This document shows, piece by piece, positions 1,826-54,312 of a stretch of 64,000 nt of DNA. The notes beneath the pieces were generated by a model. That model was not told the origin of the DNA. It ran no database searches and saw only the letters and a list, made by a program, of their open reading frames with translations. Numbering within the stretch: the first letter of the stretch is position 1; every line of letters begins with the position of its first letter. Position numbers and translations under genes: made by a program. The stretch comes from Octopus sinensis (Eukaryota). The stretch is taken from the NCBI RefSeq assembly GCF_006345805.1, contig NC_043006.1, positions 6,200,001 through 6,264,000 of the forward strand, written 5' to 3'.

Positions 1826-2094
1826 ATAAGAAACAATAATTTAGAAACTTATTCACTCATCTATAACACTCTTCTTTTGTAACTATCATTACGTTGAACA
1901 GGAATTAGTCTCTAACCAATGTCTCACAAGATTATCAAAATTCCTCAAAAATATCCATAGTAAACAGATTGAGGAGAAGCCTTCATGTGGTCATTCAACC
2001 TGCTAGAAATAGAAAACAAATCTGCTTTAAATCAGTCAGTTATCAAAAATATACAATATTCAGAGGTGAAATATCTTTGATTATAGATCTGTTC

Positions 2095-2641: not shown

Positions 2642-2647
2642 TTTATT
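2642..2647 (-). terminator. Candidate polyadenylation signal AATAAA overlapping the stop of exon B
   Basis: Minus strand reads TAAATAAAA at 2649-2641. Confidence 0.45.
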
Positions 2648-2798
2648 TAATACTGCTTGCATGATTGGATTATATATGCTATTAAGCCTTCAAGTTCAGA
2701 TTTTTTTTTAATACCAGCAAATACCAGCCTCGTACCTGGGTAATACTGCTTTGGATTGTACAAAAACTTCCTGATTTCATCTTGATTGAGAATGCGAC
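2647..2798 (-). CDS. Cytochrome c-like terminal exon B (GRILNQDEIRKFLYNPKQYYPGTRLVFAGIKKKSELEGLIAYIIQSCKQY*)
   Basis: Acceptor aattattttag|GT in phase 1; 21/49 identical, ungapped, to cytochrome c exon 2; M80L, W59L, Y67F; intact frame. Confidence 0.9.
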
Positions 2799-4379: not shown

Positions 4380-4860
4380 ACACCTCCTCAGGCAGGTGGC
4401 CCTGCTTGATCTGTAGAAAAGGTGTAGGTAGAAACTCCATAAGATGTACCCAGTGTAAGCTATGGACACATAAGAGGTGCAGCAACATCAAAGGAAGATT
4501 AACTGAGAAGACAGCTTTTGTGTGCGGCAGATGCACAGGGACAATAAACACCACAGATGCTCAGAAAACAGATTCCATGACACTCCAGGGGAAGAAACTA
4601 GAAGTAGATAATAGCTTCCGCTACCTAGCTGACCAAGTTAGTAGTGGGGGGTGGATGCTCTGAGAACGTTACCACTAGAATAAGAATAGCCTGGGCAAAG
4701 TTTAGAAAGCTCCTACCCCTACTGGTGACAAAGGGCCTCTCGCTCAGTGTGAAAGGTAGATTGTATGATGCATGTGTGTGAACCACCATGCTTCACGGGA
4801 GTGAAACATGGGCCATGACTGCAGAGGACATGCGTAGCCTCGAAAGAAATGAAGCTAGTA
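4380..4860 (+). mobile_element. RTE-like LINE fragment
   Basis: [42 protein letters not shown]. Confidence 0.85.
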
Positions 4861-8959: not shown

Positions 8960-9990
8960 AGAGCCAATGTGAAAGTTTGTGTTAAACTTGGGAAGTGTGC
9001 TACGGAGACATTGAGCATGCTTCAGCAAGCTTATGGCAATGAGGCAATGGGTTGTACACAATGTTTAGAGTGGCATGGGTACTTCAAAAGACACTTTGCC
9101 TCCCCAAAATCCATCCCCTCCTCACCGTGGTGGGGATGCTGGCAACGGGTAGTGTCAGAGCTATGCCGTCGGGAACTTCAGTTCCTGGTAGGGCCACCCA
9201 AGGTGGATTGGTCTGACACCGAGTGGTATTAGGGCCACAACCCGGCAAATCCTCGGTGAAATCCTCGGAGTGTCTGTTTCGGCAACCGGCGGCTCCTCGG
9301 TTGTTCTGTCACTGCATCTGTGGACAATCTGCAGCAAACAGGATGTCTCTACATGCGGGATTGTTGGGGACCACTTGTGAAATCCACATATTCCCACAAA
9401 ACTTCTTCCAAAGAAGAAGCCGATTCAACCCGCCCAGGGTGAATGTCGCCACAAGTACAAGAAATTCAAAAGTAGAAGAACATCCTGGGAAGATGATGAG
9501 CGATCTGGAAGACATGCAACAAGCGTCACCCCAGAAATGTGGTATTGTGCATCAAGAATTTGTCCAAGGCCAGACCATCGATCCTGAGTTCTACTGCAAT
9601 GGTTCCAAGCATCTGAGGGAGAACATTTGGCAAAAGCGACTGGATCTGTGGGACATGAATAATTGGATTCTTCATGTCAACAATGTACCCTGTCACTGAG
9701 TTCTCCTCACTCATGAGTTTCTCGCCCAAAACAACAGGGTATCACTTCCACACTCACCCTATTCACCAGATTTAGCACCTGTGGACTTCCGTCTCTTCTC
9801 GAAAATGATAATGCAGCTCAAAGGTCGCTGTTGTCAAGATCCAAGTGAATTGCAGAAGGTCCTCAACCCACTTGTGGAAAACGTCTTCCAGACCACAATC
9901 CAAAAGTGGCAAGAATGCTGGGACTGGTGTACTGTGGCACAAGATGTCTATTTAAAAGGAAATGATGTTAAAACTTACATAAATAGCTCA
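8960..9990 (+). mobile_element. Mariner transposase remnant with an unrelated insert at about 9090-9470
   Basis: KLGKCATETLSMLQQAYGNEAM (HTH), HQEFVQGQTI, WILHVNNVPCH, HSPYSPDLAP; disrupted frames. Confidence 0.9.
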
Positions 9991-10408
9991 TTTGTTTGAT
10001 TAAACATAACTAGTTTTGATAGGAACGTTTTGATACCTTTTTCTTTACTGCCCACAAGGGGCTAAACACAGAGAGGACAAACAAGGACAGACAAACGGAT
10101 TAAGTCGATTACATCGACCCCAGTGCATGATTGGTCCTTAATTTATCGACCCCGAAAGGATGAAAGGCAAAGTCGACCTCGGCGGAATTTGAACTCAGAA
10201 GGTAACGGCAGACGAAATACTGCTCAGCATTTCGCCTGGCGTGCTAGCATTTCTGCCAGCTCGCCGCCTTATGTTTTGATACCACCTTATAATATACCAT
10301 GGAAAAATTATTTTTTCTTCCGATCCTCAGAATTACTCAAATATGAAATCATATGATACTTACCATCTTTAAAGTCCTCAAAAGTTAATTTAAACCAAAC
10401 ATTTTGTA

Positions 10409-10557
10409 CTAATTCTCATTACATGCATGGGTCATATAAGCTATTAGCATATTAACATTATCTTTCTCCATACTAGCAACTTTTATCTTTGTAGAGGGTA
10501 AAACAGACTTTGGGCGATTCAAAAACTTCCTAAGTTCATCCTTTTTGTAAACATGAC
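10409..10557 (-). CDS. Gene A exon 4 (GHVYKKDELRKFLNRPKSVLPSTKIKVASMEKDNVNMLIAYMTHACNEN*); divergent cytochrome c C-half
   Basis: Acceptor ttcatttttag|GT in phase 1. Coding length 149 nt, the same as cytochrome c exon 2. Keeps PK, P-TK, LIAY and Cys102; about 18/50 identical to the 2647-2798 exon; Met80 position is Ile. Confidence 0.8.
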
Positions 10558-10605
10558 CTAAAAATGAATTTATATATAAATGTAAAGATTATATGTGCTC
10601 ATATA

Positions 10606-12251
10606 TTGGGTCATCCCATAAATAATGTGGGTTTTTTATATTTATTTTATTTTTCAAAATTAAGATAAACAAAGTTCTTTTTATAATCTAAAATATACTC
10701 TCCTTCCTTTTCTACAATGCTCTTCCATCTATCTGGTAGACTTGCAAGGCCCCTCTTTCAAAATTCACTTGTCTGTGATGAAAAATACTCTTCCAGTACT
10801 GCTCTGACCTCATCTACGGAATTCATACTTTTTCTGTCCAAATAATTTTGAAGACTGAAGAATAAATGTTAATCAGATGGAGCAATGTCCAGTGAATATG
10901 GTGGGTGGGGCAAAATAAGTTCATTCATGAGACTTGACAGCAAAGAAGAGCACACATTTGCTCTCTGCCCATGATTAGACTTGGAACCCATTGAGCCAAT
11001 TTGATGATTTTTCCAATAGCATGCAGGTATCAATGAAAGGTTGAATGGCTAAATCCAAGTTTCTTTGCTAGTTCCTCAATAGATACGACAGGATTTTGTT
11101 CCACCATGGGTTGCAGGACATCCTCACCGAGCTCTACAGATCTTCCAGGACATGGCTCGTCTCCTAAGCTGTAGTTTCTGGCTCAGAATTTCTGAAAACA
11201 CTCTCTCTTTCTCTTTTACTCTTTTACTTGTTTCAGTCATTTGACTGCGGCCATGCTGGAGCACCGCCTTTAGTCAAGCAAATCGACCCCGGGACTTATT
11301 CTTTGTAAGCCCAGTACGTATTCTATCAGTCTCTTTTGCCGAATCACTAAGTGACGGGGACGTAAACACACCAGCATCGGTTGTCAAGCAATGCTAGGGG
11401 GACAAACACACACACACACACACACATATATATACATATATATACATATATACGACAGGCTTTTTTCAGTTTCCATCTACCAAATCCACTCACAAGGCAT
11501 TGGTCGGCCTGGGGCTATAGCAGAAGACACTTGCCCAAGGTGCCACGCAGTGGGACTGAACCCGGAACCATGTGGTTGGTAAGCAAGCTACTTACCACAC
11601 AGCCACTCCTGCGCCACTGTTGACACTGGTTTACACTTATTGTCCCATCCTTGTATATCATCATCATCATCATCATCATCATCCAGTGTTTTAAATCTGG
11701 GTTTGCCCCCGTTAACAGGGGTGACCGGATCTACCTCAATGCCGTAGCAACCGAGGTAAGCAGGTGCAGCCCACCCCCAATCTTTGGGCTGGCTGGTACC
11801 CATTCTCCTTTGCTGTCATGAGGCTTTTTTTTTAGCTGGATTTTCTACAGGGATCATGCCCTTGCTTACCCCTAACCTCAGTTTATTAGACATGAGTGGT
11901 CTTGAGACCAAGGCCTCTGCCACAATTTTTTTAAAATGTAGTGGAAAACTAGCTCAGCAAGGCAGGGACCCTACTCCCTGAGACCCTTTTCAGAGCCCCC
12001 CCCCCTAATATACTGCATTAATATTCTTCACACTTTTCATAAAGCAAAATAAGCTGATTATGCTCCTTTGTCATTTCCATTAAAGCTTTGAAAAAATAAC
12101 CATAACTGCACTCTTCAAAACTTGCACTAAGAATAAGTACAAGGCAAGTAACTACCTGCTTTTATAGGAAGTTGACACAGTTTATCCTGTCCCCTTCAAC
12201 TCTTAGTTCATGCAATTGAAAAAAAAATGCATTATTTATGGGATGACCCAA
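10606..12251 (-). mobile_element. Mariner-like DNA transposon with TIRs and TA target duplication, carrying nested SINEs
   Basis: TTGGGTCATCCCATAAATAATG at 10606 and its reverse complement ending at 12251, TA on both sides; C-terminal transposase remnant LPDRWKSIVEKEGEY on the minus strand. Confidence 0.85.
11205..11615 (-). mobile_element. SINE family A
   Basis: Full-length copy nested in a mariner element. Confidence 0.9.
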
Positions 12252-14318
12252 TATATTGTTTATATCAATGCCTACTCCTTGGACCCAAGTCTTTAAGCCT
12301 TCCCAATAACTTATCTTTGTGACTTCCGTTCCTCCATCACACTTCTAACTATGGCATTATCTTCTTAGTTGCTGTAATTATATGAGAATAGAATTGCACA
12401 TATTTCATCCCTCATTTGTACTTTGGGCATTTCAAAAACGTCATTTGTACAAAATACGGCAGATATTGTATTCACCTCAATAGACGTCATTGATTGGTTA
12501 AAATTGCCGAAATGCAAGAAATTAAACAACAAATAGCTTACAAACTACAGAATTTTCTCAAGAAAGCCAAGAGAAAAAGATGTTTTATGTAACACATTCT
12601 ACCAGTATACGAAGTTAAAAAGTGTTTAGTTACAAAGAAATTATTTTTAAAATCTGCCAGTCAAAGTAAAAAGATCCTTTTTTTCCTATATTCACCTTCT
12701 TGTACACTGACAGTTCACTCTGACATGTCATTGACACCATTTCTAATTTCTTCCCAGCTAGTCCCTTCCACACCTTTATATAATGCAAAATTACCATGAA
12801 TCTCCCCTAAAGCAAACTACTTATGCTTGCCCCTCTATCATACTTTAGTCTTTTAACACCTGGCATAAAACCACTGGTCCCACTGTCAATACACTCCCAT
12901 TCAGGTAACGGGTCTTAAACTTTTTTTAAGTTACTTGCTGACCTCACAAGTACCAGTGTGTTATACACAAAAACACGAAAAACTCCTAATGCACATTGTA
13001 ATGTGGTAGGGATTAAAAAAGGCATTCCGCCACAGAAACCAATCTAAAATAAATACTGGAACTTGAAACAGCCCTGCAGCTAATCTGGAACTCGACTGAG
13101 GAAAGAAAACTCCGAATGACCCATCCTTGTTTTCTTTGTATCGTCTATCTGGATGTTTTGTTGTCCCTTTTTTATGTCACCTAACTGTCTGGAGGCTGCA
13201 CCAGGCTCCAATCTGATCTGGCAGAGTTTCTACAGCTGGATGCCCTTCCTAACGCCAACCACTCCGTGAGTGTAGTGGGTGCTTTTTACATGCCACCAGC
13301 TCAGGTGCCAGGGGAGTCTGGCAGCAGTCACGATCAGTTGGTGGTTTTTACGTGCCACCGGCATAGAAGCCAGTCAAGGCGGCACTGGCATCGGCCACGT
13401 TATATATATAGATATATAATTGCAAAGATAATCTGGAACTCAACTGAGGAAAGAAAACTCCGAATGACCCATCCTTGTTTTCTTTGTATCACCTGTCTGG
13501 ATGTTTTGTTGTCCCCTTTCTTGTATCACCTAACTGTCTGGAAGTTTTGCGTTCTTGTCCCATTTTGTATTTTTTATATATAAAAACATTGCGGCGTACG
13601 TACACTTTGGTCTCTTATATGTAATTATATACATATGTCTAATTTATGTACAACTCTATTATTCTTTCTATTCTTTCATTCTTTCTGTCAGCCCTTTCAG
13701 ACCTTCTTCATTCATTCCACTCTTCATTTTTCGTTTCCCCCTCTCTCACATTTCCTGACCTTCTCTTCAAGCTCACTTTCCCTCCTCTTTTCATTTCACT
13801 GTGTCCCTTTCATTTTTTTCACCCCTCTTAATTCTTCTATCCCTCTACCTCTACCTCTCACTCTACTCTCCCCACGTAACTAGTGTTTGGCCAAGCCTGA
13901 CCTTTCTTTCTTGGTTCGACTACCATCCATGCAACATCTATATTCCTCCCTCTGCCTGCCAAATCTTATGTGCCTGTCATAAGGCTTTACTTACCCACAC
14001 ACCAGCTTAATTTAATTTGTCCTTAGTCGAAAGACACCTGTTGTTATGTCCTGTTACATGCATTCGTATTTGTGTAACATTTCTCCAGTTTTTTTTCTGT
14101 CCTTGTTTCCATATACATTCGCTGCTTTCTTCCAAGGAATCTAATGCTCTTACCTTTTTTTTTCTTGGGGCTGGCCAAATTGGAGCAATCTCAAGTATAA
14201 CCAGCCAAAATTGCAAAGATAATCTGGAATTCAACTGAGGAAAGAAAACTCCGAATGACCCGTCCTTGTGTTCTTTGTATCGTCTGTCTGGATGTTTTGT
14301 GTTCTTGTCCCATTTTTG

Positions 14319-14354
<36 letters not shown>

Positions 14355-14985
14355 AGATAGGGGTTGAAAATTCAACCCACCATGGGATAATATATATCCA
14401 ATATACTGCCAGATAGGTACCCAACAAGATTAATACATCTATTGTATTATATGGGTAAAGGTAATAATATTACCGTAAATCAATACTACAAAATTAGAGA
14501 ATGGAGAAACATACTTAAATCAATAAAACATCAACTATCCGATGATACCCAATCAATACTTTAATACACCATTACATATGAGTAAAGGCATTATACAAAA
14601 TGAGATATACAGTAATAGTAAAAAGATAAAGAGATATAAGTAAAAAATTTCAAATATAATATGCATACTGTATATCTCATTTTGTATAATGCCTTTACTC
14701 ACATGTAATGGTGTATTAAAGTATTGATTGGGTATCATCGGATAGTTGATGTTTTATTGATTTAAGTATGTTTCTCCATTCTCTAATTTTGTAGTATATA
14801 TATATATATATGTACTTGTGATATTTTTCTGTATTTACCTCCAAACCTTCGTGAGCTGTCTGGAGTAAACATTATCTGAGAGAAATTTTCTTTAAGTAGT
14901 AGAAATAGCTAAAAAAATTTTTTTTGGCTGATATTTCTACTAAGTTCAGTATGTGGCAAAGTAATTTATTTTACTAAGCCCTAAT

Positions 14986-15016
<31 letters not shown>

Positions 15017-15936
15017 CAGGGTGTGATGGGTAAATTGTTACTATTTTTAATTTTATGCATGGGCATTGTCTGTTTTTGATTTTATCAACTACACAGTATT
15101 GTAGGGTTGGTTGGGGACTGTCTGTGAGAAAAACAGCATCATGACACAATTCACTCTACTAGATATTTGGAAACAACATGCTGTACTGTTTGGCGTTCAC
15201 ACCAGAAGCAACGATACATACAGATGGTGCACACACAGTACAAGCATTGGTTTGCCATGTCCTCAAAACATGAACTGAGAGTGATAAAAACCAAACAACC
15301 AGTCAACATCATGGTGTTTGGAGCGATCACTCATGATGGCGATGTTATGCCTCCATTCATCTTCCTACATGGGCTCACACTTAACACGGAGGCCTTCATC
15401 AAGTGCCTGGAGGAGGTAGTGTTACCCTGGGTCAAGAGGGTGGCTGCTGGAAGACCCTATGTCTGGCAACAGGATTCTGCACCATGCCACACAAGCAGGA
15501 GAACCCAGTGATGGTTGTCAGACAACTTCTGCGACCACATCACCCTTAAGATCTGGCCACTTAACTCCCCTGAATGGAACCCTCTTGATTATAAGGTGTG
15601 GAGCGCAGCTGAGCTAGAGACCAACAAAACTCCTTATAATACTGAAGATGAACTGAAAGCAAGGATTATGGTGGCATTCACCATCCAGAAGAGTTGCAGG
15701 AGATTCTGAAGTCATCTGAAGGCTATGGTTGACGCCAATGGCAATTTTATTGAATAAATTTACATTTTAGTATTTCAAAATACTTTTATCTAATTTTGGT
15801 AAATATATCTGTTAATATGAGATAATTTGATTGATTTGATCTAGTTTAAGCTCATGAGCTGTGGTCATGCTGGGGCAGTCAGTGTTATTTTCATTTTTAT
15901 GTAATTTAGACGACTGTATATTCACCGCACCCTGTA
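15017..15936 (+). mobile_element. Tc1/mariner DD37D (maT-type) transposon remnant inserted in (TA)n
   Basis: Ends CAGGGTG...CACCCTG flanked by TA; MVFGAI...WQQDSAPCH...WPLNSPEWNPLDY with 37 residues between the last two Asp; internal stop. Confidence 0.85.
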
Positions 15937-15960
15937 TTTATATATATATATTTATATATA

Positions 15961-16039
<79 letters not shown>

Positions 16040-17803
16040 ATATATACATATACAGGGTAGCAAATATTCGTTATAAATATCACCACCTGTAGCCCAGCAT
16101 GTATAAATAGTCAATAGACGACATATTCATATTTTAAAATAGTGTACATTTAAACACAAAAGAAAACTACCCTTTAACAGGTAATTTTTACATGCTAGAA
16201 ATAGCAGCCAACATGGCCAAAACCCCGATTTAATAGCAATTTTCGAAGTAAATGAAAAATAAAAACTTTTACCTTGTTATTTTTATTAGCGGTTATACCA
16301 TGGTTTCAAATTTCTTTAGCAAATAGGATTATTTGCCATCCTTTAATAGGTAATTTTGCAAAACAATATTATCCGCCAGGCAAATTCTCGTCAATAACCG
16401 GCTTTAATAACTAACTTATAATTCAGAAACAAGATAACACGTGTCCTGTCATTGTAATAATAATAATATACATTGATCTCTATTTTTGTTAGCAGTTGTA
16501 TGTTGTATGTCGATATGTTTGCATGCAGTGTAAATTAACGAAATAGAAGCAAATTGTAAATACTTTGCAACTGCTGCAATAATTATGAAATGTTGAATGA
16601 ACATTAGAGATGTATATAACTTGGGCCTTCCACGTAATTGTTTTTTGTCAAGAGTTTCACCTCCAGCTGTTCTCCAGCTGTATATGTGGTGATGTATGTG
16701 CGCGTTTAGTAACATACGTAACAGGCACACAAACACACTCACAGGCACACATTCATATACATATAGTAAGAGAGACACATACAGACATACATTCACGCAT
16801 GTCAGTTGTCACATGTGTATATCTATGTATAGATGTGTGTGTGTGTGTTTAATAATGTACTTAATGCGGAAACACGCACACAGTCAGAGAAACTTACACA
16901 CTCATACACCCACACACGTACATTCAGGACACATGCACACTCATATATGTGACATTGTTGTCGTGATATAAAACGTCCTTTACTATTTCATACGTATTGA
17001 ACACGCAAGCACACACACATAAAGTGAAACAAGTCTTATTACATTAGAATTAAAAGTGAAAGAATAAAGTGCAACAATATTATTTCACACGAAGAAGTTA
17101 ATTTGTAGACAGAAATTACAAACCCCATTTCAGCAAATTAACTGTAGAAGAAAATGGGCTGAGTGAACAAACTTGAGCCACTTTAGGATATCTTTTTCTA
17201 ATGCATGAATACTCAGTGGCATGGTTGAATTCCCATTGGTTAGTAATGAAGGCTTATCTGCTGTATCACAACAGTTTTCAATAGAGAGAGAAATGTAAAT
17301 AGTGTATTTAAATAGACAGAGTGCAAAAAATTTTTAATAAGTAATGTTGTAGGGAGAACATGCAAACAGCATGACGGCAAAGATATTTACACATGACAGA
17401 GAAAGAAGAATTGCAGAGGATGTAAGTGAGAAAGAGAAGAGAAACAGAGAAAGAATCATTTGATCACTGCAGAAGTCAAAGGGAGAGAATCGGTTGAAAA
17501 CTGCAGTTTTTACAGAAAAACCCATGTGAAAAACCAGGTCAGTTTCTCGCATTACATGGGAGCTCAGGGCAAAATATAGTCCATGACTATCCTTGGCATA
17601 TAAGTAATATGTGTATAAAGTTTGGTAAAAATTGGTTGAAAACTGTAGAAATGCATACGTATTACACACACACACATATGCACACAGACACGTCCTTTGT
17701 TTTTTATATATAGATGTCAAAAATTATTGATATAGAAAAATAGTAGAATGTTCTAAACAAATACAAACTTCTGACTAAAATTTCCAAATTAAAGAATAAT
17801 TAC

Positions 17804-17934
17804 CCATGTGTGCCTCATCTATGATATTCATCAAGCCAACATCTTCATCCTTCTCACTACATATAATCAGTAGATATCGGCCTAAACGTTTATATATTCT
17901 CTCACCAGCTCTAAGATTGATTCTCAAATTTCTC
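17804..17934 (-). CDS. Gene A exon 3, 131 nt (RNLRINLRAGERIYKRLGRYLLIICSEKDEDVGLMNIIDEAHM + G); degenerate cytochrome c N-half
   Basis: Acceptor tctacattttag|, donor G|gtaatt, only one frame open. AGERIYK resembles the N-helix motif GKxIF; ends in a split Gly codon like the cytochrome c exon. Confidence 0.75.
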
Positions 17935-18583
17935 CTAAAATGTAGATAATGGATAACAAAAGTGAGGACATACATTAAACTTAAAATAAAGAGTATCTTT
18001 AAAAACTATTTGCAAAATAAAAACAAACTGAAATTGTATTAAAATTGTATTGAATATAATATTGAGTAATTTCTCAACAGCATTTCCATATAACTTGTGA
18101 TTTATTCCAGCAGCCCTTCTTATAAATGTGAAGCAAGATGGTTTATCTTAATTTTCTACTACATAAAAAATGACTTACTTTATATCTCATATTTTATATT
18201 CAAATATTCTGAAATTAGTTTTTTTTTTTTGTAGGTGTGGGCTAGAGACGGAGACAGAGAGAAACACAGCATCTATAGATAGCAAGACAGACAGATAGAA
18301 AGGCAGTCAGGTTATTCAAAAGTAACACATTTTAAAGAATCCTTTCTAAAATTAAACCTACACAAGCATTTGTAAAAGGTCTTCTGTAGGAAAGACTAGG
18401 ACATTCCTAAATGTCAGAATAGAAAAACATGGGAAGCCTTAATGAGAGGAGAAACGTTTAAGTCAGGAATAGCTGAATGTACTTTTTTTAAAAAAGTCCA
18501 TTTCTAAAAATTAAGTTAAAAATCTGGAAAATTATCTCCCTTTTTTTAAAAGCGTATTAAAGTTATTGTCATCTTCAAATCTC

Positions 18584-18902
18584 TCTATATATAAAGCTGA
18601 AGTTGTCTGTGTATGGCACTTTGGTAGCCTTCAACTAACACTATCTCCCCCGAGACCCTGCAGTGCAAGTTGACCAAAATTGAGAGTATGTTAACACCAA
18701 AAATTACTTACATCAAAAAGGTGCTTTTTTTCTATGAAAACCCCTATTTTTTACGATTTTTTGACTGCTGTGTCACCATTTTTCAGTGTATTTCAACCAG
18801 AAAAATGTTCACTTAAAGAGAATAACAAGCTACATAATGCCAAATTTTTACTTTTCGAAAATTCCAATTCTAAAGGGTCAAAACAAAACCGAGCAATGCT
18901 AG
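18584..18902 (+). mobile_element. Non-autonomous Helitron-like element
   Basis: 5' TCTATATATAAA, 3' CCGAGCAATG...CTAG; second copy in the opposite orientation at 45096-45483. Confidence 0.6.
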
Positions 18903-18966
18903 TATATTATACAATTGTTCAAATATAAAATTGTAATCTTCAGAGCTTAAAAATTTTATTTCTTAC

Positions 18967-19021
18967 GGTCGTATTGCTCTCTTAAAAATGGTGTTTCCAT
19001 CTGCAGTTCCCAAACAGGTAT
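18967..19021 (-). CDS. Gene A exon 2, 55 nt ((D)TCLGTADGNTIFKRAIR(P))
   Basis: Acceptor ttgctacttcag|, donor CC|gtaaga. The phase 1-in/phase 2-out frame is open and matches both neighbouring exons. Confidence 0.7.
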
Positions 19022-21289
19022 CTGAAGTAGCAATAAGATGAGAAAATTTGAATTATTATCATATCAAAGACAGGAATGTTTTCTTTTATTACATCATGGT
19101 AGCATCATTGATTAGTAGAATTTAACGGTGATGAAATTCTTGCAAAACATTTTGTTTTGAATAGACAAAAAGCCATCTTTTATTGAAGCAGAGACAATTC
19201 ACTGAAGGATGTTATATTAAGGGTGCAAAGCAAATTAACTTTTGTTACCAAAATAATAATTAGAAAGTCTCGGTATTCTAATGTTAAAACAGATATTTTC
19301 CATTTTGTTGTTGAAATAATGTAAATGCATATATTTTGGAAAATGTAATAACATGAAAGATATTGTTACATTAATTGTTTGTTAAATACATATAAGATAT
19401 GTTACTGAGTGTCACGAGTCAAAAACTCGAACCATTGACGTGGTAACTATGTCATTACTCAACCTGCTGCAAATAACAACCAAATGCCTCCCAAATCACA
19501 TTCTACTATTTTTTAAAAAGGAAGGAAACACTGGATGACATGGTCAAGATACATTGTGGTTGAATATACCATTGATGATTACAGTTGAGTCATCTTTGAT
19601 CATAAATCTGCTCAATCAATGAGAATACAACAAATTAAAACTGTAACAAGATGAAAGGTCTGTAACATTGGGGGGGGGCAGCTTTCATCCCCTTACATTA
19701 AATTATTTATCGAAGGAAAAGCCAAGACTTCCGAATATCTTCAAACAGAATAAAATATTTTAATTTCTGAATTCGCAGTATCATCATCATCGTCATCATC
19801 ATCATCATCATCATCATCGTTTAACGCCCGTTTTCCATACTAGTATGGGTTGGACGATTTGACAGGGGTCTGGGAAGCCAGGAGGCTGCACCAGGCTCCA
19901 GTCTGATCTGGCAATGTTTCTACGGCTGGATGCCCTTCCTAATGCCAACCACTCCATGTGTGTAGTGGGTGCTTTTTACGTGCCACCAACATGGAAGCCA
20001 GTCAAGGCGGCGCTGGCATGCATTTCTTTCAGGTTGAATCTGTAGCCTAGGAACTAGTCGCAGTGGTCAAATGGAGCGAACCAAATCCTGTCTCGTTCCA
20101 GCATAGTGTAGCATCGCCACATGGTGGCAGCTAAAACATGTCCTTTCCGTTTGACTGTCAGCTTCGAGAAAGGGAAATTTTGCTGCTGCTAGTTCTCTGC
20201 ACATGTGCATGAGGGAACTTCCGGCAAGCCGCCCGGAAGAAATCCAACTCTGTGCATGTGTGCTGAAGACTTCCAAAATGGTGTCACTACAAAACTAAAA
20301 AGTGGTTTTGTTGAATTTTACTCTAAATTTATTTTTCATTAAAAAATGGATATGATACATGAAACTTTTATTTAAATGTATTAGAAATTAAAACTTATCA
20401 AAGCTTAAAACTAAGTTGGCCTGCAGTATTCCAGATGATTCAACATCTCCATTCTTACACACATCTCCTTAACATATGTACCCAGAATTCATCCATCAGA
20501 ACCATAAGATTTAATTCAAAAATGACCTTGACCCCAATAATAGAATTCTTTTCTTCTTATACTACACTAACATTATATTTTTTTTTTCCCTTTTTTTTTT
20601 ATTAAAAGTACTTTATTTATTTATTTATTACCCACAGGGGAGCTAAACATAGAGGAGACAAACAAGGGCAGACAAAGGGATTAAGTTGATTACATCAACC
20701 TCCATTACATCACTGGTACTTATTTAATCGCTTCTGAAAGGATGAAAGGCAAAGTCGACCTTGGTGGAATTTGAACTCAGAACGTAGCGGCAGACGAAAT
20801 ACTTATTTCTTTACTTCCCACAGGGGGCTAAACACAGAGGGGACAAACAAGGACAAATGGATTAAGTCAATTATATCGACCCCAGTGTGTAACTGGTACT
20901 TATTTAATCGATCCTGAAAGGATGAAAGGCAAAGTCGACCTTGGCAGAATTTGAACTCAGAACGTAGTGGCAGATGAAATACCGCTAAGCATTTTGCCAG
21001 GCATGTTAACGATTCTGCCAAACTCACCAACTTATTTAAAATACTTATTGAACTAATATTTATCAATGCAGACCACAATCCTCCTTTCTATAATGGTGTA
21101 GCAGTTGGCACTGCTTCTGGGAATTTCTTTTTTAATGTCTATATATGGAAAATTTTTATTTTCGCATATAACATATAAACATGTACGTCTTTTAGAACTT
21201 TGTCATTTTATAAGATTTTGCTGACAAATTTTAAAATTAACATAAGCATGTATTTACGTCAAAACCATTTGTGCGCAAATTTTTTTATC

Positions 21290-23045
21290 ACAGCAACTAG
21301 TCACACACCACAAGGTTTAATGGAAACCACTGAAGCAACCCAGCATGCTTGCAGCATTACCATAGGTGATGGCGAGGCTTAGGCATTGAGAAAGCCAAGC
21401 ACCTTCATGGGCATCACCTGGCACCTCGCTGAGGCAAGCTACCAATATTGACAAGAACTCTGCAGTTAGTGGCCCAGTCCCTCCAAACGTCTCAAATGCC
21501 ACAGGTTGGAAGAGATAGTTCGCTGTTAGATCCTGATACTTCAGAATTTTCTTCCATTTGGCTATGGAAGCAGTGACCCTCCCATTAACTGCAGCATCCA
21601 GGATGTGGGAGGGAGAAAAGGAGTCACAGACTGTGGCATCCCAAATGAGGCATCTACCTCTAACCCAGGGACAGAGGATAAGACCATCTGGCCTCTTTCC
21701 ATCACTTCTGGATAACCCTGACAGCTCCAGAACTGAGGGGATATTAATCCGAGCCAGGATCGGCTTAAGGATTAGGGTTTAGCTTGGTGTGACAAGTGAA
21801 GTGACCAGCATTTAGGTGGCAAGACAGACCTTAAAGACCTGTTGGGTTGAGGGGCCTACCACAGCGGCATCCGAGTCCCCTACAGACGTCAGCTCCCACT
21901 CTGAGTGTGATGGAGATGCAGAGATCATCTGGACAGACTGAGTAGACCTCCAATGTTGGCCATTGGCAGGTCGTCAATCCAGTCCCCTGAGAATTTTGCC
22001 CTATTACAAGGAGAGAGCTGAAAGTGGCACTTGAATGCAGACTGTCCCATACTCTCTGTTTCTGTCTATCCTCCACTGTAACCAGAACTGACAAACCCAG
22101 CTCTCTCCACTGTAATAGAGCTTAATCCATCTCTCTGTTGGAATTAGTCCATGCTGGAGAGGTGAGGATGTTGCCTTCTAAAGAGGAGCAAGTGTGGGTG
22201 GAGGAAAGACAACAGGGAAGATATAAAGATGAGCACTTGCGCAGACCTAGACCCCCAAACCATTTGGGCAAAGCAGCTTGGTTGTGGGAGTCTGGAGAGA
22301 GTTTGACATTGACCAAGCATTCAAGTTTCCTGAAGATTAGGTCATCAAAGTATTGAAGGGACAACAGGAATCTGTAAGAGGGTCCAACTCTCAGAAAATA
22401 CAATAGCTTAGGAATTGACAAGTAATTCCTAAGTACCAAAAGATCTTGGTGGGGCTCACTTACTTCAAGGCTTTTAAAAGTTGTTCAAGGTTTTTCATTT
22501 TGGATTTAAAGATGGACTTGAAAGCTAGGTCAGTAATTAGAGCTCTAAGGGAGCACCATGCTGATGAAGAAGGAATTGCTATTGAGGGGAAAGAGTCAAC
22601 AAATAGTTTAGTAGTCTGCTCATGCAAAGCTGGGCGGTTGAAGCACCAGAGCTTGCATTTGGAGCTGTTAACACTAAGACCCCTATGACCAAGTTCCTCA
22701 ATCATTGTCCTCACAGTTGCAAGTACCTTGTCAGGAGGGCCTCCCAAAGAAGCATCATCGAGGTGCCAGACATTTAGGTCAAGGTCGGCTCCCATCGAGG
22801 TAACATCATTAATACCCAATGCGAATTGGGCAGGACCAAGTGGATCACCCTGTTAGACTGCAGAAGCAGATGGAGTCTAGCAGGGCTCCTGATAGGCTTG
22901 CCAAGCAAAGTGATAAAGTGGTGGGGAATTTTCCCTTACTGTGTGGAGGATGATGTCTCGACTGATGGAGTTAAAAGCAACTTAAGGTCAAGCTTGAGGA
23001 TGACCTTTGGGGACTCAGAGGGCAAGTTGGTGAAAGCCCTGGTGG
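21290..23045 (-). mobile_element. CRE-clade non-LTR retrotransposon fragment (RT + restriction-like endonuclease)
   Basis: GDPLGPAQFALGI, WHLDDASLGG, GGLGLR, CRCG zinc knuckle, DGKRPDG...PW...WDATV, FQPVAFETFGG; lies in the first coding intron of gene A. Confidence 0.8.
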
Positions 23046-23121
23046 CATAAAACAGTTATCAATTAAAGAGTTATCAACTGCTCTTCCATATGGATGCTGT
23101 CACTTGAACAATTCAACTTAA

Positions 23122-23341
23122 CCCTTTAGTGTTTAAACCGGCTATATCCGGCCCAAATAGTCTACTCATTTTATGCTCAAACTGGCCAGAACCAGTATCT
23201 CACACCTACCCTGCAATGTCATTCTAAAAATAAACAATTACATCTTTCAAATCTTGAAGCTACAAGATAATACCAGATTAATTTTTTTAAATGTAAATGA
23301 ATAAGGATTACTTCTGACATATTAATTTGAACACTAAAGGG
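23122..23341. mobile_element. piggyBac-like MITE
   Basis: TTAA-CCCTTTAGTGTT...AACACTAAAGGG-TTAA. Confidence 0.75.
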
Positions 23342-23529
23342 TTAAATTATAATGTCAACCAATAAATTTTATAAATTTAGACAAGTTTGTCTACTATAGA
23401 GAGACAAGATAATTGATTTTTTGAGCAAAACCATTGGTCTTTGAAAAAAAAAACAAGTTTGTAAATGTTTATAATAAAACTGAGAATATAACATTCAATA
23501 ACTCTATCACAGAAACTTTATCTACTGCT

Positions 23530-24285
23530 AAACAAACTCCACCTGTCTAACACCCGTGGACATGTTTACAAAGTCAGAAAACAGCACAGCTCCTTCCATG
23601 ACTTTCGGAAACATTTTTTCACGCTAAGAGTTGCTGAAGCATGGAACAAACTGCCGGCATCAGTTGTTAGTTGTTGGAGCACTGCATCCTTCAAAACTTC
23701 CATGCTTCCTGAGATTTGCCCACACTACACCTGATTTTCTCCCTTCCATACACACGCAAGCATCTATCTGACTCATACACTGTTCACTTCCCAGACATTT
23801 GTACATTACTGTATATGCTTTATACGCACTTTTGACAAGTTGTGGTGCACCTGAGCACTGTATACAATAATTTCATTATTATTATTATTATTATTATTAT
23901 TACTAACAATAACTCTGAGTACCTTTTCAAACTCCACCTGTCTAACACTCGTGGAGATGTTTACAAAGTCAGAAAACAGCACAGCTCCTATTAATTTCGA
24001 AAAAAGTTTTTTCACGCTAAGAGTTGCTGAAATATGGAACAAACTGCCGGCATCAGTTGTTAGTTGTCAGAGCACTGCATCCTTCGAAACTTCCATGCTT
24101 CCTGAGATTCGCCAACACTACACCTGATCTTTCTCCCTTCCATACACACGCAAGCATGTATCTGACTCATACACTGTTCACTTCCCAGACATTTGTACAT
24201 TACTGCATATGTTTTATACGCACTTTTGACAAGTTGTGGTGCACCTGAGCACTGTATACAATAATTTCATTATTATTATTATTAA
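23530..24285 (+). mobile_element. Two tandem CR1/L2-type LINE 3' ends with (ATT)n tails
   Basis: TRGHVYKVRKQHS...FFTLRVAEAWNKLP repeated at about 23530-23900 and 23925-24285. Confidence 0.85.
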
Positions 24286-24308
24286 ATACTTGTATTATAG
24301 TTACTTAC

Positions 24309-24357
24309 CAAAATTTATAACCATGCAGAGAAATACTGCCAAAACAATGAGCTTCAT
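24309..24357 (-). CDS. Gene A exon 1: signal-peptide exon (MKLIVLAVFLCMVINF + G) of a cytochrome c-derived secreted protein
   Basis: Acceptor ttctgttttag|GACATC-ATG (A at -3); basic n-region plus hydrophobic h-region; strong phase-1 donor G|gtaagt. Confidence 0.75.
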
Positions 24358-24845: not shown

Positions 24846-25100
24846 AAAAAGAATAAAAATGTCTTATGAAAGAATAAATCAATGAATTTCTTTTAAAACA
24901 TTGATTGCAAACTTTGGTACAAGGCCAGCAGTTTCAGGGGAGGTAGGAAGTCAATTACGTTGACCCCCAGTACTCAACTGGTGCTTATTTTATCGGCCCC
25001 AGAGGGATTAAAGGCTGAGTTGACCTTGGTGGAATTTGAATTCAGAGTGTAAAAGACAGACTAAATGTTAAGTATTTTGCCCAGCATGCTAATGATTCTT

Positions 25101-25880
25101 ATTTCTTTACTACCCACATGGGGTTAAACACGGAGGGGACAAACAAGGACAGACAAACGGATTAAGTCGATTACATCGACCCCAGTGCATAACTGGTACT
25201 TATTTAATCGACCCCAAATGGATGAAAGGCAAAGTCAACCTCAGTGGAATTTGAACTCAGAAAGTAGCGGCAGACAAAATACCTATTTCTTTACTACCCA
25301 CATGGGGTTAAACACGGAGGGGACAAACAAGGACAGACAAACGGATTAAGTCGATTATATCGACCCCAGTGCATAACTGGTACTTATTTAATCGACCCCG
25401 AAAGGATGAAAGGCAAAGTTGACCTTGGCGGAATTTGAACTCAGAACGTAACAACAGACAAAATACCTATTTCTTTACTACCCACAAGGGGCTACACACA
25501 GAGGGGACAAACAAGGACAGACAAACGGATTAAGTCGATTATATCGACCCCAGTGCATAACTGGTACTTATTTAATCGACCCCGAAAGGATGAAAGGCAA
25601 AGTCAACCTCAGTGGAATTTGAACTCAGAATGTAGCGGCAGACGAAATACCTATTTCTTTACTACCCACAAGGGGCTAAACACAGAGGGGACAAACAAGG
25701 ACAGACATTGGTATTAAGTCGATTACATCGACCCCAGTGCATAACTGGTACTTAATTTATCGACCCCGAAAGGATGAAAGGCAAAGTCGACCTCGGCGGA
25801 ATTCGAACCCAGAACGTAGTGGCAGACGAAATACCGCTAAGCATTTTGCCCGGCATGCTAACGTTTCTGCCAGCTCACCA
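25101..25880 (-). repeat. Tandem array of 184-bp units derived from the SINE-C body
   Basis: Unit starts at 25102, 25286, 25470 and 25654; a single tRNA-like head at about 25880. Confidence 0.9.
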
Positions 25881-51691: not shown

Positions 51692-51840
51692 TTATGATTT
51701 ACAGCATTCTTCCAGATAGGCTATAACATCGGCTCGTTCTTTTTCTTTCTTAATACCTGCAAATATCATCTTTGTGCCAGGAATGTATTCCTTGGGATTC
51801 TTTAGATAAATAAAAAGAGTCTCCCTTGTCCAAGTAATAC
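51692..51840 (-). CDS. CYCS: Cytochrome c, coding exon 2 ([49 protein letters not shown])
   Basis: Acceptor tattttccag|GT in phase 1; W59, Y67, PGTKM80, FAG motifs; TAA stop. 181+149 = 330 nt = 109 aa; intron 2291 nt. Confidence 0.97.
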
Positions 51841-52055
51841 CTGGAAAATACAGATGAAAAAAAAAAAAAAAAAAAGTCAATTTTGTTACCATTTTCTAAG
51901 ATTCTTAAACAGAATATTTCTAATAGAAAAAAAAAAAAAGAATATTATGAAATGTTAAAAAGAGTAAAAGTGAATAAATTAGCAGAGATGACTAGCAACT
52001 TGCTGTGTGGAGCAGGTGTGCTTGGAAATGCAGGCCAGGTAAAAATGGACATTAA

Positions 52056-52912: not shown

Positions 52913-54131
52913 TTAACATTTGCTCCTTTAACATTCATTTTTCCATGCCAGCAGAAGTCGAATGAGTACGCAGAGTATTTACAGTTAGATTCTCTTCCTG
53001 TCATTAACCTTCACATGGTTCCTTATACCATGTCTCTGAAAGCAGAGAACCAGAGGATGATTTCTTTCTTTCCTTTTTATTTTGTTTGATAGAAAATGTC
53101 AACAAACATCAAAGTTCCATTTAGTTCAAGACTTTTCATACAAAGTGAGTAATAAGTCAACTGGTTTCAGTGGAAAAGCAACAGTTGGTCTGTCACTAAT
53201 TCATTTCTAGCAATTACGTCCCCTTCCTTTGAAAGTTTATAACAATTACTAAATTTCCCTTCAAATTTCATCCCAACCTTTTTTTTTTTTTGCATACAGC
53301 AAGCTTAACTGTGTGTCGCTTAAAGAATATATAGTATTTGCAAGTGGAGAGAGAGCTTTCATCACTTGTGGTTGTCTCACACTGAGGATGGGAAACGTCC
53401 AGAAACCTAGGTCTGTATCATGTAAGGCTAAAAATGGGAGTGATGACCTCCCTTGCAAATGCTATATGGACACAAACTGTGAGTTAATAGCCAGAGATTA
53501 CATCACCCCCCCCCCAGTGCACAACTGGTACTTTATTTATCGACCCCGAAAGGTTGAAAGGCAAAGTCAACCTCAGCGGAATTTGAACTCACAACGTCGC
53601 GACAGACGAAATACAGCTAAGCATTTTGCCCAACGTGCTAACGTTTCTGCAAGCTCACCCACCTATCCCGTACCATTCATGCTGTTTTACCACACATTTT
53701 TACAACAGCAACAATGAAATGTAATTTATGAAAAAAAACCCATTCTTTACTGAACAGTTCATTTAACAATCTGAAGAAAATATTAAAAGAACTTTCAGTT
53801 ATGCTAACCCATAATCTAAATGTAGATTCTTATGTTATTTCTCATTGTTCGTCCTATTTTCTAATTTTATTCCTCCTGCTTCCCGACATTCTGTGACATT
53901 TTGCGTACTAAGGAAGAATATAATAGTTCTCATTTCATTTGTTGAAATATGGTTATACCATTTCATAGGACTGGAGCAGATCGGTGAAATTTTAACACGA
54001 CTTACAAATAGAGGCCAAGGAAAATTCATTTTGCTAAAACATACAATAAACAAATTAGGAAGACTATAACATATTCACAGAACTGTCGGAAGCATTTAGT
54101 AAAGAGCCAAGAATTCTCCAGTAACACTTAC

Positions 54132-54312
54132 CTTTGTTTTTATTGGCCTCAGTGTAAGCAAAGCCAGGTGCCTGGCCAGTTTTACGTCCTATCAGACAAT
54201 ACAAATTTGGTCCAGTTTTGTGTTTTCCACCAGGATCTACTGTATGGCACTGAGCACACTTCTTTTGGAAAATGCTTTTACCCTTAGCTGCATCTCCAGC
54301 AGGAATTGGCAT
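54132..54312 (-). CDS. CYCS: Cytochrome c, coding exon 1 ([60 protein letters not shown] + G)
   Basis: CXXCH heme motif and [13 protein letters not shown] motifs. Acceptor tttctag|G one base before the ATG; phase-1 donor G|gtaagt at 54131; 181 nt. Confidence 0.97.

What the first reader, a model, noticed from the sequence alone, without database searches (positions are those of the whole stretch)
10409..24357. Hidden four-exon gene encoding a secreted, heme-motif-less cytochrome c-derived protein
Seen: four minus-strand exons (49+55+131+149 = 384 nt), all with GT-AG sites and compatible phases (1, 2, 1), give a stop-free 127-aa protein: MKLIVLAVFLCMVINFDTCLGTADGNTIFKRAIRPRNLRINLRAGERIYKRLGRYLLIICSEKDEDVGLMNIIDEAHMGHVYKKDELRKFLNRPKSVLPSTKIKVASMEKDNVNMLIAYMTHACNEN. 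Residues 1-21 look like a textbook signal peptide (MK, hydrophobic core, C-L-G at -3/-1). The last exon is a cytochrome c C-half: same phase-1 Gly56 intron, same 149-nt coding length, PK, P-TK, LIAY and Cys102. There is no CXXCH and the Met80 position is Ile. Established: mitochondrial cytochrome c has no ER signal and needs CXXCH for HCCS-mediated heme attachment. Inference: a cytochrome c duplicate was re-routed to the secretory pathway and reused as a scaffold (saliva/venom, mucus, egg or skin protein, or signalling peptide precursor). I know of no described animal family like this, and the supplied ORF track does not show it as a gene.
Basis: partly seen in the sequence, partly recalled or inferred. 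Interest (0 to 1): 0.95.

Follow-up and report, generated by a model that had tools for sequence, protein, structure and literature searches.

The report
Octopus secreted heme-less cytochrome c paralogue
Next to the normal octopus cytochrome c gene lies an old duplicate that has lost its heme-binding site, gained a secretion-type leader and evolves very fast; databases already hold the gene model, but I found no paper describing it.

Summary
The four minus-strand exons have GT-AG borders and splice into a 127-aa ORF. The gene is not hidden: the protein is identical to RefSeq XP_036362166.1 (LOC115216643 isoform X2, Octopus sinensis). Profile comparison shows the whole mature protein, not only the last exon, is collinear with cytochrome c. 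CXXCH is replaced by IRPRN, and Met80 is lost in most forms. Positional orthologues with the same intron phases exist in O. vulgaris, O. bimaculoides and Argonauta hians. The leader is invariant between O. sinensis and O. bimaculoides. The mature part changes 2-3 times faster than the flanking introns, with only in-frame indels. The best reading is an octopod family of heme-free, probably secreted, diversifying proteins derived from cytochrome c. Secretion, expression site and function remain untested. No paper on it was found.

The parts
24309..24357 (-). Coding exon 1 (ATG at 24357; 49 nt, phase 1): MKLIVLAVFLCMVINF, the hydrophobic leader. An AG acceptor lies 6 nt upstream of the ATG, as in the canonical gene.
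   Evidence: 100% identical at the protein level in O. bimaculoides; 12-residue Kyte-Doolittle hydropathy 3.5
18967..19021 (-). Coding exon 2 (55 nt, phase 2): (D)TCLGTADGNTIFKRAIR(P). It holds the predicted cleavage site CLG|T and a stretch aligned to the cytochrome c N-terminal helix (Gly6, Phe10). It ends inside the former CXXCH.
17804..17934 (-). Coding exon 3 (131 nt, ends phase 1 in the Gly56-equivalent codon): RNLRINLRAGERIYKRLGRYLLIICSEKDEDVGLMNIIDEAHM(G). It replaces the heme-wrapping loops and is rich in large hydrophobic residues. The acceptor is a NAGNAG (tag|gag).
10409..10557 (-). Terminal exon 4a (149 nt including TAG): a cytochrome c C-half used in isoform X2.
2647..2798 (-). 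Terminal exon 4b (152 nt including TAA): a second, more cytochrome c-like C-half (GRILNQDEIRKFLYNPKQYYPGTRLVFAGIKKKSELEGLIAYIIQSCKQY) used in isoform X1 (XP_029641992.1).
54130..54312 (-). Canonical cytochrome c, coding exon 1 (M1 to Gly codon, CAQCH intact). Parent-type gene, 27 kb upstream on the same strand.
51695..51841 (-). Canonical cytochrome c, coding exon 2 (GITWTRETL...EECCKS, TAA).
1938..2000 (-). Relic of the terminal exon used by O. bimaculoides isoform X3. It is interrupted by two stops here, so it is probably non-coding in O. sinensis.

Best explanation
LOC115216643 is an old tandem duplicate of the mitochondrial cytochrome c gene that became a different kind of protein. The shown steps come first. 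The whole mature chain (about 106 aa) is collinear with cytochrome c and keeps the positions that form the cytochrome c folding core: Phe10, Leu32, Tyr67->Phe, Leu68, Pro71, Lys72, Pro76, Thr78, Ala96, Tyr97 and Cys102. The covalent heme site CXXCH is gone (IRPRN in O. sinensis; T-Q-Q-R-I in O. bimaculoides). The Met80 ligand is lost in four of the five Octopus forms. A new 5' coding exon supplies an MK + 14-residue hydrophobic leader ending in C-L-G|T. The gene ends in either of two duplicated cytochrome c C-half exons, used alternatively (isoforms X1 and X2). The gene, its intron phases and its neighbour (Rcd1/CNOT9) are conserved from Octopus to Argonauta. The leader is under purifying selection, while the mature part accumulates amino-acid changes 2-3 times faster than the introns. 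The remaining steps are inferred. The leader most likely sends the protein into the ER, where no heme lyase acts. There it would fold without heme around a core supplied by the extra hydrophobic residues of exon 3, possibly with one disulfide between the two invariant cysteines (C60 and C125). It would then leave the cell as a 12-kDa basic protein (pI 9.2-9.7). Its surface is being diversified by selection, and exchanging the C-terminal half adds further variety. That pattern is typical of proteins that meet other organisms or gametes, such as secretion, immune, reproductive or venom-type components. The actual target is unknown.
For: The exons and ORF are verified. The product is identical to XP_036362166.1, and isoform X1 uses exon 4b. 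The canonical gene lies in the same window, and no other intron-bearing nuclear copy turned up in the 2.7-Gb genome. Homology is supported by hmmsearch against PDB (1e-10, profile 65/74-126 to cytochrome c 45/51-103) and by hhalign family versus cytochrome c (98.3%, E 2e-14, 100 columns, residues 23-127 to 9-109). MAFFT with 30 cytochromes c gives the same register. The phase-1 Gly56 intron is shared. Orthologues and synteny with Rcd1 were found in O. bimaculoides, O. vulgaris and A. hians, and Argonauta has the same intron phases. Only octopod proteins match the N-part among 1.84e9 representatives and 5.8e9 clusters. For selection, the leader has 0 nonsynonymous changes in 50 sites. The mature part has pN 0.147-0.179 against an intron p of 0.075 (binomial P 9e-5 to 7e-8). 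Exon 4a omega is about 1.8, and the only exon indels are 12 and 3 nt. Octopus-Argonauta identity is 46% for the paralogue and 84% for canonical cytochrome c. The terminal exons form one clade apart from canonical cytochrome c, and the 4a and 4b orthologues pair up. There is no recent gene conversion (59% DNA identity). Leader hydropathy is 3.5 against -0.01 in the canonical protein, and the mature protein has 2 Cys. The segment aligned to cytochrome c 19-55 has about 18 large hydrophobic residues against about 7 (maximum 10) in 30 cytochromes c. The AF2 C-half has pLDDT about 73 with the cytochrome c helices, and all top Foldseek PDB hits are cytochromes c.
Against: SignalP was not available, and in Argonauta the hydrophobic stretch is 19 residues long and could be a membrane anchor. 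The AF2 models are of low confidence (mean pLDDT 47 and 56; N-half below 50). The second MSA contained cytochromes c, so its Foldseek hits (E about 7e-3) are partly circular. Apocytochrome c is known to be unfolded, so a stable heme-free fold is only a hypothesis. Overall dN/dS within the exons is about 1 (0.84-1.11), which alone would also fit relaxed constraint. The case for positive selection rests on comparison with blastn-alignable intron blocks, which may underestimate the neutral rate. Pfam PF00034 does not detect any family member.
Confidence: 0.62

Rival explanations
1. The hydrophobic N-terminus is not cleaved. The protein would then be a type II / signal-anchored membrane protein or a resident of an internal compartment (ER, Golgi, lysosome, mitochondrial outer membrane), not a secreted one.
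For: 19-residue windows at the N-terminus exceed 1.6 Kyte-Doolittle in both Octopus and Argonauta, and the Argonauta hydrophobic run is 19 residues long. No secretion data are available.
Against: In Octopus the h-region has only 14 residues and is followed by a helix-breaking polar stretch with small residues at -3/-1 (C-L-G|T; V-D-A|E in Argonauta). There is no KDEL-type tail and no positive flank after the hydrophobic stretch. An invariant leader with a hypervariable remainder is the pattern of secreted proteins.
Confidence: 0.18
2. It is a precursor that is cut at the conserved dibasic sites (FKR|A, YKR|L) into smaller peptides, as in a prohormone or conotoxin-type precursor, so the cytochrome c-like fold is irrelevant.
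For: I28-F29-K30-R31-A32 is invariant from Octopus to Argonauta, and residues 1-32 are identical between O. sinensis and O. bimaculoides while the rest varies. This matches the organisation of a conserved signal plus pro-region followed by a variable mature part.
Against: The same IFKRA stretch aligns with the conserved cytochrome c N-terminal helix (Gly6...Phe10), and its partner Tyr97 is also invariant. That argues for an intact N/C-helix contact rather than removal. The second KR is not conserved in position in Argonauta.
Confidence: 0.1
3. It is a decaying duplicate (pseudogene), or a gene-prediction artefact that stitches a cytochrome c relic to chance exons.
For: dN/dS is about 1 over the mature region, Pfam finds no domain, and no transcript data were seen here.
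Against: All five coding exons, their GT-AG sites and phases are intact in four species, including Argonauta. About 3.5 indels would be expected under neutrality, but only two occur and both are in frame. The leader has 0 of 50 nonsynonymous changes. Exon divergence exceeds the intron rate, which drift cannot produce. Three independent annotation pipelines give the same model. To my knowledge, RefSeq calls isoforms only from transcript evidence.
Confidence: 0.05
4. It is still a heme protein that binds heme non-covalently and acts as an extracellular heme or small-ligand carrier.
For: The 70s loop (NPKxYxPGT) and the helices lining the heme pocket are kept, and O. bimaculoides X1 still has Met at position 80.
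Against: Cys14, Cys17 and the His18 ligand are all replaced in every member, and Met80 is lost in most. The pocket-forming loops are replaced by a much more hydrophobic segment. No other His is conserved across the family.
Confidence: 0.05

Closest known systems
Mitochondrial cytochrome c (class I c-type cytochrome, Pfam PF00034; the canonical octopus gene at window 54312-51695)
   Same: The paralogue is homologous over the whole mature length (hhalign 98.3%) and has about the same mature size (about 106 vs 104-108 aa). It shares the phase-1 intron in the Gly56 codon. It conserves Phe10, Leu32, Leu68, Pro71, Lys72, Pro76, Thr78, Ala96, Tyr97 and Cys102, and has a similarly basic pI.
   Different: It has no CXXCH, no His18 and mostly no Met80. 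It carries an N-terminal hydrophobic leader encoded by an extra exon, an extra intron inside the former heme motif, and two alternative terminal exons. It evolves about 3 times faster (46% vs 84% identity between Octopus and Argonauta). The Pfam model does not recognise it.
Tissue-specific cytochrome c paralogues of animals (mammalian testis cytochrome c, PDB 2aiu; Drosophila cyt-c-d)
   Same: These are also gene duplicates of cytochrome c retained with a specialised role.
   Different: By established knowledge, those keep CXXCH, heme and mitochondrial location. This one has lost the heme site and gained a leader.
Bacterial periplasmic class I cytochromes c (c2/c550 type; e.g. hits P0161, P0163, P0189)
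   Same: They have the same architecture of a cleavable N-terminal signal peptide followed by a cytochrome c domain.
   Different: They keep CXXCH and heme and act in electron transfer. The octopus leader is a new acquisition on a eukaryotic gene, not inherited.
Repurposed non-canonical cytochrome c TfcP of Myxococcus xanthus (PMC8833165, seen; title and abstract only)
   Same: It is a cytochrome c-type protein recruited to a task other than respiration, outside the cytoplasm.
   Different: It is bacterial, and it is described as a cytochrome c, so presumably still a heme protein. There is no relation of descent.
Conotoxin-type secreted precursors of molluscs (an analogy of evolutionary pattern only)
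   Same: Both show an invariant signal and N-terminal region with a fast-diversifying mature part.
   Different: There is no sequence or fold relation. The protein here is much larger with only two cysteines, and no evidence links it to venom.

Membership tests
Class I / mitochondrial cytochrome c (PF00034) | Significant sequence homology to cytochrome c | tested here: met
   hmmsearch against PDB gave 1e-10 and hhalign gave 98.3%, E 2e-14 over 100 columns. However, Pfam PF00034 gives no hit at E <= 1 for any member, while the canonical protein scores 9.5e-15.
Class I / mitochondrial cytochrome c (PF00034) | CXXCH motif for covalent heme attachment, with His18 as axial ligand | tested here: not met
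   The aligned columns read I-R-P-R-N (O. sinensis), T-Q-Q-R-I (O. bimaculoides) and V-Q-D-G-R (Argonauta). There is no CXXCH anywhere in the proteins.
Class I / mitochondrial cytochrome c (PF00034) | Met80 as sixth heme ligand | tested here: not met
   The residue is Leu (sinensis X1, Argonauta), Ile (sinensis X2, bimaculoides X2) and Met only in bimaculoides X1.
Class I / mitochondrial cytochrome c (PF00034) | No cleavable presequence; import into the intermembrane space coupled to heme lyase | tested here: not met
   A hydrophobic N-terminal leader is present (hydropathy 3.5 vs -0.01 in the canonical protein). Actual targeting is not testable here.
Class I / mitochondrial cytochrome c (PF00034) | Animal cytochrome c gene structure: phase-1 intron in the Gly56 codon | tested here: met
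   The donor ...ATG G|gt and acceptors ag|GT CAT and ag|GT CGC match the canonical ...AAA G|gt and ag|GT ATT.
Class I / mitochondrial cytochrome c (PF00034) | Cytochrome c fold | tested here: inconclusive
   AF2 mean pLDDT was 47 (family-only MSA) and 56 (MSA with cytochromes c). The C-half reaches about 73 and superposes on cytochrome c at 1.4-2.1 A over 46-48 columns, but the N-half is below 50.
Secreted proteins with a cleavable signal peptide | n-region, hydrophobic h-region of 7-15 residues, c-region with small residues at -3/-1 | tested here: met
   The sequence reads MK / LIVLAVFLCMVINF / DTCLG|T; Argonauta has VDA|E. This was judged by rule of thumb only; SignalP was not available.
Secreted proteins with a cleavable signal peptide | Demonstrated cleavage and export | not testable with these tools
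   This needs proteomics or expression experiments.
Octopod cytochrome c-derived leader-bearing family (defined here) | Positional orthology next to Rcd1/CNOT9, four coding exons with phases 1, 2, 1, leader + IFKRA + PYLL(I/L)(I/V)C + cytochrome c C-half ending in C-K/N | tested here: met
   These features were found in O. sinensis (the window), O. vulgaris (L010), O. bimaculoides (L009) and A. hians (L011, two tandem copies).

The most novel reading that the evidence does not exclude
Octopods would possess a lineage-specific family of secreted, heme-free proteins built on the cytochrome c scaffold. The heme would be replaced by a protein hydrophobic core, the surface would be under diversifying selection, and the C-terminal half would be exchangeable through alternative duplicated terminal exons. 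To my knowledge this would be the first case of cytochrome c being recruited to the animal secretory pathway. It would also be a natural example of a cytochrome c fold that is stable without heme.
Probability: 0.45. Interest if true: 0.8.

Novelty: new variant of a known kind. Interest (0 to 1): 0.62.

Why it matters
Cytochrome c is one of the most conserved and best studied proteins, and without heme it does not fold. A duplicate kept across octopods (Octopus to Argonauta) without the heme site, with a secretion-type leader and with accelerated amino-acid change raises two testable questions. The first is how a cofactor-dependent fold can be converted into a cofactor-free scaffold. The second is what extracellular task octopods gave it. 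It also shows that automatic names such as 'cytochrome c isoform X1' hide a protein that cannot be a cytochrome. The alternative use of two duplicated C-half exons is a compact example of diversification by exon duplication.

Tried and rejected
- Pfam scans of all family members found no cytochrome c hit, so Pfam is insensitive here and profile methods were needed.
- AF2 with the six family sequences alone gave pLDDT 47, too poor for a fold search. The second model used cytochromes c in the MSA and gave only weak Foldseek E-values. I use these only for the C-half.
- A weak exon 3-like match at window 19492-19409 looked like a decayed duplicate exon, but its DNA alignment score is below shuffled controls. 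I rejected it.
- Recent gene conversion from the canonical gene as the cause of C-half similarity is rejected: DNA identity is 59% and the longest identical run is 8 nt.
- Exact look-ups of the window's own proteins in the contig collection returned nothing, because own-genome records are left out. No Logan (read-assembly) member occurs in any family cluster, so I obtained no transcript evidence.
- Eight literature searches by names, accessions, motifs and tissues found nothing on this gene.
- I looked for a divergence time in the Argonaut genome paper and did not find one.
- The two other cytochrome c matches in the genome (contigs C2976 and C9737) are not relatives of this paralogue.


Full report
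**1. The observation**

They are 49, 55, 131 and 149 nt long. Each internal border has AG before and GT after it, and the phases are 1, 2 and 1. The window is G000:C10:6200001-6264000 of a 2.72-Gb assembly. Database hits identify the organism as Octopus sinensis.

**2. The gene is real and already annotated**

A search of 5.8 billion protein clusters returned a 100%-identical, full-length match: XP_036362166.1, 'uncharacterized protein LOC115216643 isoform X2 [Octopus sinensis]'. The same gene has an isoform X1 (XP_029641992.1 / XP_036362165.1, named 'cytochrome c isoform X1', 128 aa). It shares residues 1-79 but ends differently.

That other ending is encoded at window 2798-2647 (minus strand), behind an AG acceptor and in the same phase. 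It spans at least 24357-2647, further than the coordinates given. 'Hidden gene' is not correct. Isoforms X1 and X2 are automatic models. To my knowledge RefSeq calls isoforms only from transcript alignments, but I could not see those data.

**3. Context**

tblastn with cytochrome c finds three C-half exons on the minus strand of the window. It also finds one N-half exon with CAQCH intact.

- The pair 54312-54130 and 51841-51695 is the canonical cytochrome c gene. Its product is [23 protein letters not shown]...EECCKS, 109 aa, and Pfam PF00034 scores it at 9.5e-15.
- It lies 27 kb upstream of exon 1 of the paralogue, on the same strand.
- In the whole genome the only other cytochrome c matches are on two small unplaced contigs (see section 10).
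- Both genes have an AG acceptor a few bases before the ATG, and both have a phase-1 intron in the Gly56 codon.

**4. Descent from cytochrome c, over the whole length**

- A profile of five family proteins hits PDB cytochromes c at 1e-10. Profile positions 65/74-126 align to cytochrome c 45/51-103.
- Profile-profile comparison with a small cytochrome c alignment gives probability 98.3% and E 2e-14. It covers 100 aligned columns, with paralogue 23-127 against cytochrome c 9-109.
- MAFFT with 30 diverse cytochromes c gives the same register.
- In that register G25 = Gly6, F29 = Phe10, L56 = Leu32, G79 = Gly56 and F90 = Tyr67. Further, L91 = Leu68, P94 = Pro71, K95 = Lys72, P99 = Pro76, T101 = Thr78, A119 = Ala96, Y120 = Tyr97 and C125 = residue 102.
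- All of these are invariant in the family.
- The CXXCH columns read I-R-P-R-N in O. sinensis. Both cysteines and His18 are replaced in every member.
- Met80 is Leu or Ile, except in O. bimaculoides X1.
- An extra intron (phase 2) falls inside the former heme motif.
- Pfam does not recognise any member, which explains the 'uncharacterized' label.

**5. Conservation in other species**

O. vulgaris (CAI9728440.1) and O. bimaculoides (XP_014772792.1 and XP_014772793.1) have the same five coding exons. Their splice sites are conserved and their frames are open, including both 4a and 4b.

An HMM search of 1.84 billion representatives found just one further cluster matching the N-terminal part. It is 'cytochrome c-like' GAB1601167.1 of Argonauta hians, and a profile search added a second A. 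hians protein.

The Argonauta locus holds two tandem copies. One of them has two terminal exons. The intron phases are the same, and the same downstream neighbour (Rcd1/CNOT9, opposite strand) is present as in Octopus. No squid, cuttlefish or other mollusc protein matched the N-part. However, few such proteomes seem to be in the libraries, so absence outside octopods is not established.

A tree of the terminal exons puts all paralogue exons in one clade apart from canonical cytochromes c (100/99). The 4a orthologues pair at 95/95 and the 4b orthologues at 90/96. DNA identity between exon 4b and canonical exon 2 is 59%, so there has been no recent gene conversion.

**6. Mode of evolution**

All figures below compare O. 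sinensis with O. bimaculoides unless stated.

| Measure | Value |
|---|---|
| dS | about 0.15 |
| dN | 0.13-0.17 |
| omega, whole protein | 0.84-1.11 |
| Nonsynonymous changes in the 21-codon leader | 0 of 50 sites (2 synonymous) |
| omega, exon 4a | about 1.8 |
| Mismatch in 6.2 kb of collinear intron and flank blocks | 7.5% |
| Nonsynonymous difference, mature part | 14.7-17.9% (22% in exon 4a) |
| Binomial P against the intron rate | 9e-5 to 7e-8 |
| Indels in 536 coding nt | two (12 and 3 nt), both in frame; about 3.5 expected from the intron rate |
| Share of flank gaps that are multiples of three | 20% |

Octopus-Argonauta identity is 46% for the paralogue against 84% for canonical cytochrome c.

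Intact frames with a frozen leader and supra-neutral change elsewhere argue against a pseudogene. They argue for diversifying selection on a retained scaffold. One caveat is that blastn-alignable introns may understate the neutral rate. Another is that the counts are small.

**7. Leader and mature protein**

- Residues 3-14 have a mean Kyte-Doolittle hydropathy of 3.5, against -0.01 for the canonical N-terminus.
- The -3/-1 rule allows cleavage after C-L-G21 in Octopus and after V-D-A23 in Argonauta.
- The mature chains are 103-107 aa and about 12 kDa, with pI 9.2-9.7. They have no N-glycosylation sequon and exactly two cysteines, both invariant.
- This fits a cleavable signal peptide, but SignalP was not available.
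- The Argonauta hydrophobic run is long enough for a membrane anchor.

**8. Structure**

AF2 with the family alone gave mean pLDDT 47. With cytochromes c added it gave 56 and pTM 0.52. The C-half reaches about 73 and shows the 60s, 70s and C-terminal helices. The N-half stays below 50, with a predicted hairpin at YLLIIC/GLMNII. Foldseek against PDB returns only cytochromes c, but at E about 7e-3. The C-half superposes at 1.4-2.1 A over 46-48 columns.

The fold of the C-half is thus plausibly kept, while the N-half is open. The segment aligned to cytochrome c residues 19-55 forms the loops that wrap the heme. It carries about 18 large hydrophobic residues in the family, against about 7 (maximum 10) in 30 cytochromes c. 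I take this as a hint that side chains fill the space of the heme. This is inference.

**9. What it most likely is**

The gene is a tandem duplicate of cytochrome c. It lost heme attachment and gained a leader exon. It has been kept in octopods as a small, basic, probably secreted protein. Its surface is under diversifying selection, and its C-terminal half can be exchanged by alternative terminal exons.

- Shown here: descent, loss of the heme motif, gene structure, conservation and rate pattern.
- Inferred: entry into the secretory pathway, a heme-free fold, a C60-C125 disulfide, and an extracellular role.
- Function: the pattern resembles that of proteins involved in interactions between organisms or gametes, but nothing here points to a particular tissue.
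- Rivals: an uncleaved anchor or internal compartment (0.18), a precursor cut at the invariant FKR|A site (0.10), a pseudogene or artefact (0.05), and a non-covalent heme binder (0.05).

**10. Comparison, novelty and other observations**

The gene is derived from class I mitochondrial cytochrome c. It fails three defining features of that family (CXXCH/His18, Met80, no presequence), so it should not be filed as a cytochrome. Tissue-specific cytochrome c paralogues of animals keep their heme. Bacterial periplasmic cytochromes c share the signal-plus-domain architecture but are heme proteins. I found no paper on this gene in eight searches.

My rating is a new variant of a known kind. The models exist in databases, but their nature appears undescribed.

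Seen in passing:

- Two unplaced contigs carry an intact-motif cytochrome c gene interrupted at Gly56 by about 27 nt. It looks like a gene with a tiny intron from another organism.
- Open reading frames that are cytochrome c-like but lack CXXCH occur in unrelated public contigs.

Noticed in passing
G000:C2976:5234-5557 (L013) and G000:C9737:66719-67042 (L014): Two 97%-identical copies of a cytochrome c gene sit on small unplaced contigs. The CSQCH motif is intact and identity to the octopus canonical protein is about 52%. The reading frame is interrupted exactly at the Gly56 position by about 27 nt containing a stop. This looks like a very short intron rather than a processed pseudogene. It may come from a contaminating organism with tiny introns (a renal parasite such as a dicyemid is my guess from memory).
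   Followed up: partly
window 32013-33921 and 39041-41438: Two long arrays (about 92 and about 115 copies) of the same 21-nt unit lie in opposite orientation, flanking about 5 kb. The long 'ORFs' at 33208-33963 and 39160-40350 are just these repeats read through.
   Followed up: no
window 25100-25835, 20617-20982 and 23533-24284: A 184-nt unit is repeated 4 times in tandem about 750 nt upstream of exon 1, and a related 180-nt pair lies in intron 1. A 394-nt unit repeated 1.9 times (94% matches) lies directly downstream of the exon 1 donor. These are SINE-like repeats crowding the 5' end of the gene.
   Followed up: no
window 4316-4663 (+), 6461-7696 (+), 9217-9999 (+): There are open frames inside the intron between exons 4a and 4b. 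One has a PHD-finger match (E 4.5e-6); the others have no Pfam hit. They are probably fragments of transposable elements.
   Followed up: partly
window 3256, 27035, 42722, 43674, 44936, 56030, 57276 (both strands): An interspersed repeat translates as S-T-A/T-F-S/N-R-A-N/S-R-P-R/Q-D/V-L. It occurs at least seven times in the window and gave spurious weak matches to exon 2.
   Followed up: no
window 17935-17940 (-): The exon 3 acceptor is a tandem NAGNAG (ttttag|gag|AAATTT), conserved in three Octopus species. Use of the second AG would drop one Arg codon.
   Followed up: no
window 1938-2000 (-); L009 25706-25768; L010 35646-35708: The terminal exon of O. bimaculoides isoform X3 (95 aa, a non-cytochrome tail) is broken by two stops in O. 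sinensis and O. vulgaris. That isoform is probably lineage-specific or non-productive.
   Followed up: partly
L011 728-2675 and 10001-13393 (Argonauta hians): The family is duplicated in tandem in Argonauta. The upstream copy has two successive C-half exons, and one annotated protein (P0159, 188 aa) carries extra N- and C-terminal sequence that looks like a model error.
   Followed up: partly
L012 3001-3528 (ENA ERZ25073802) and proteins P0124, P0156, P0069, P0157: Unrelated public contigs encode cytochrome c-like domains without CXXCH. One has YGADAH in its place, fused to another domain; another is a 75-81-aa truncated form. Loss of the heme motif in cytochrome c relatives is therefore not unique to octopods.
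   Followed up: partly
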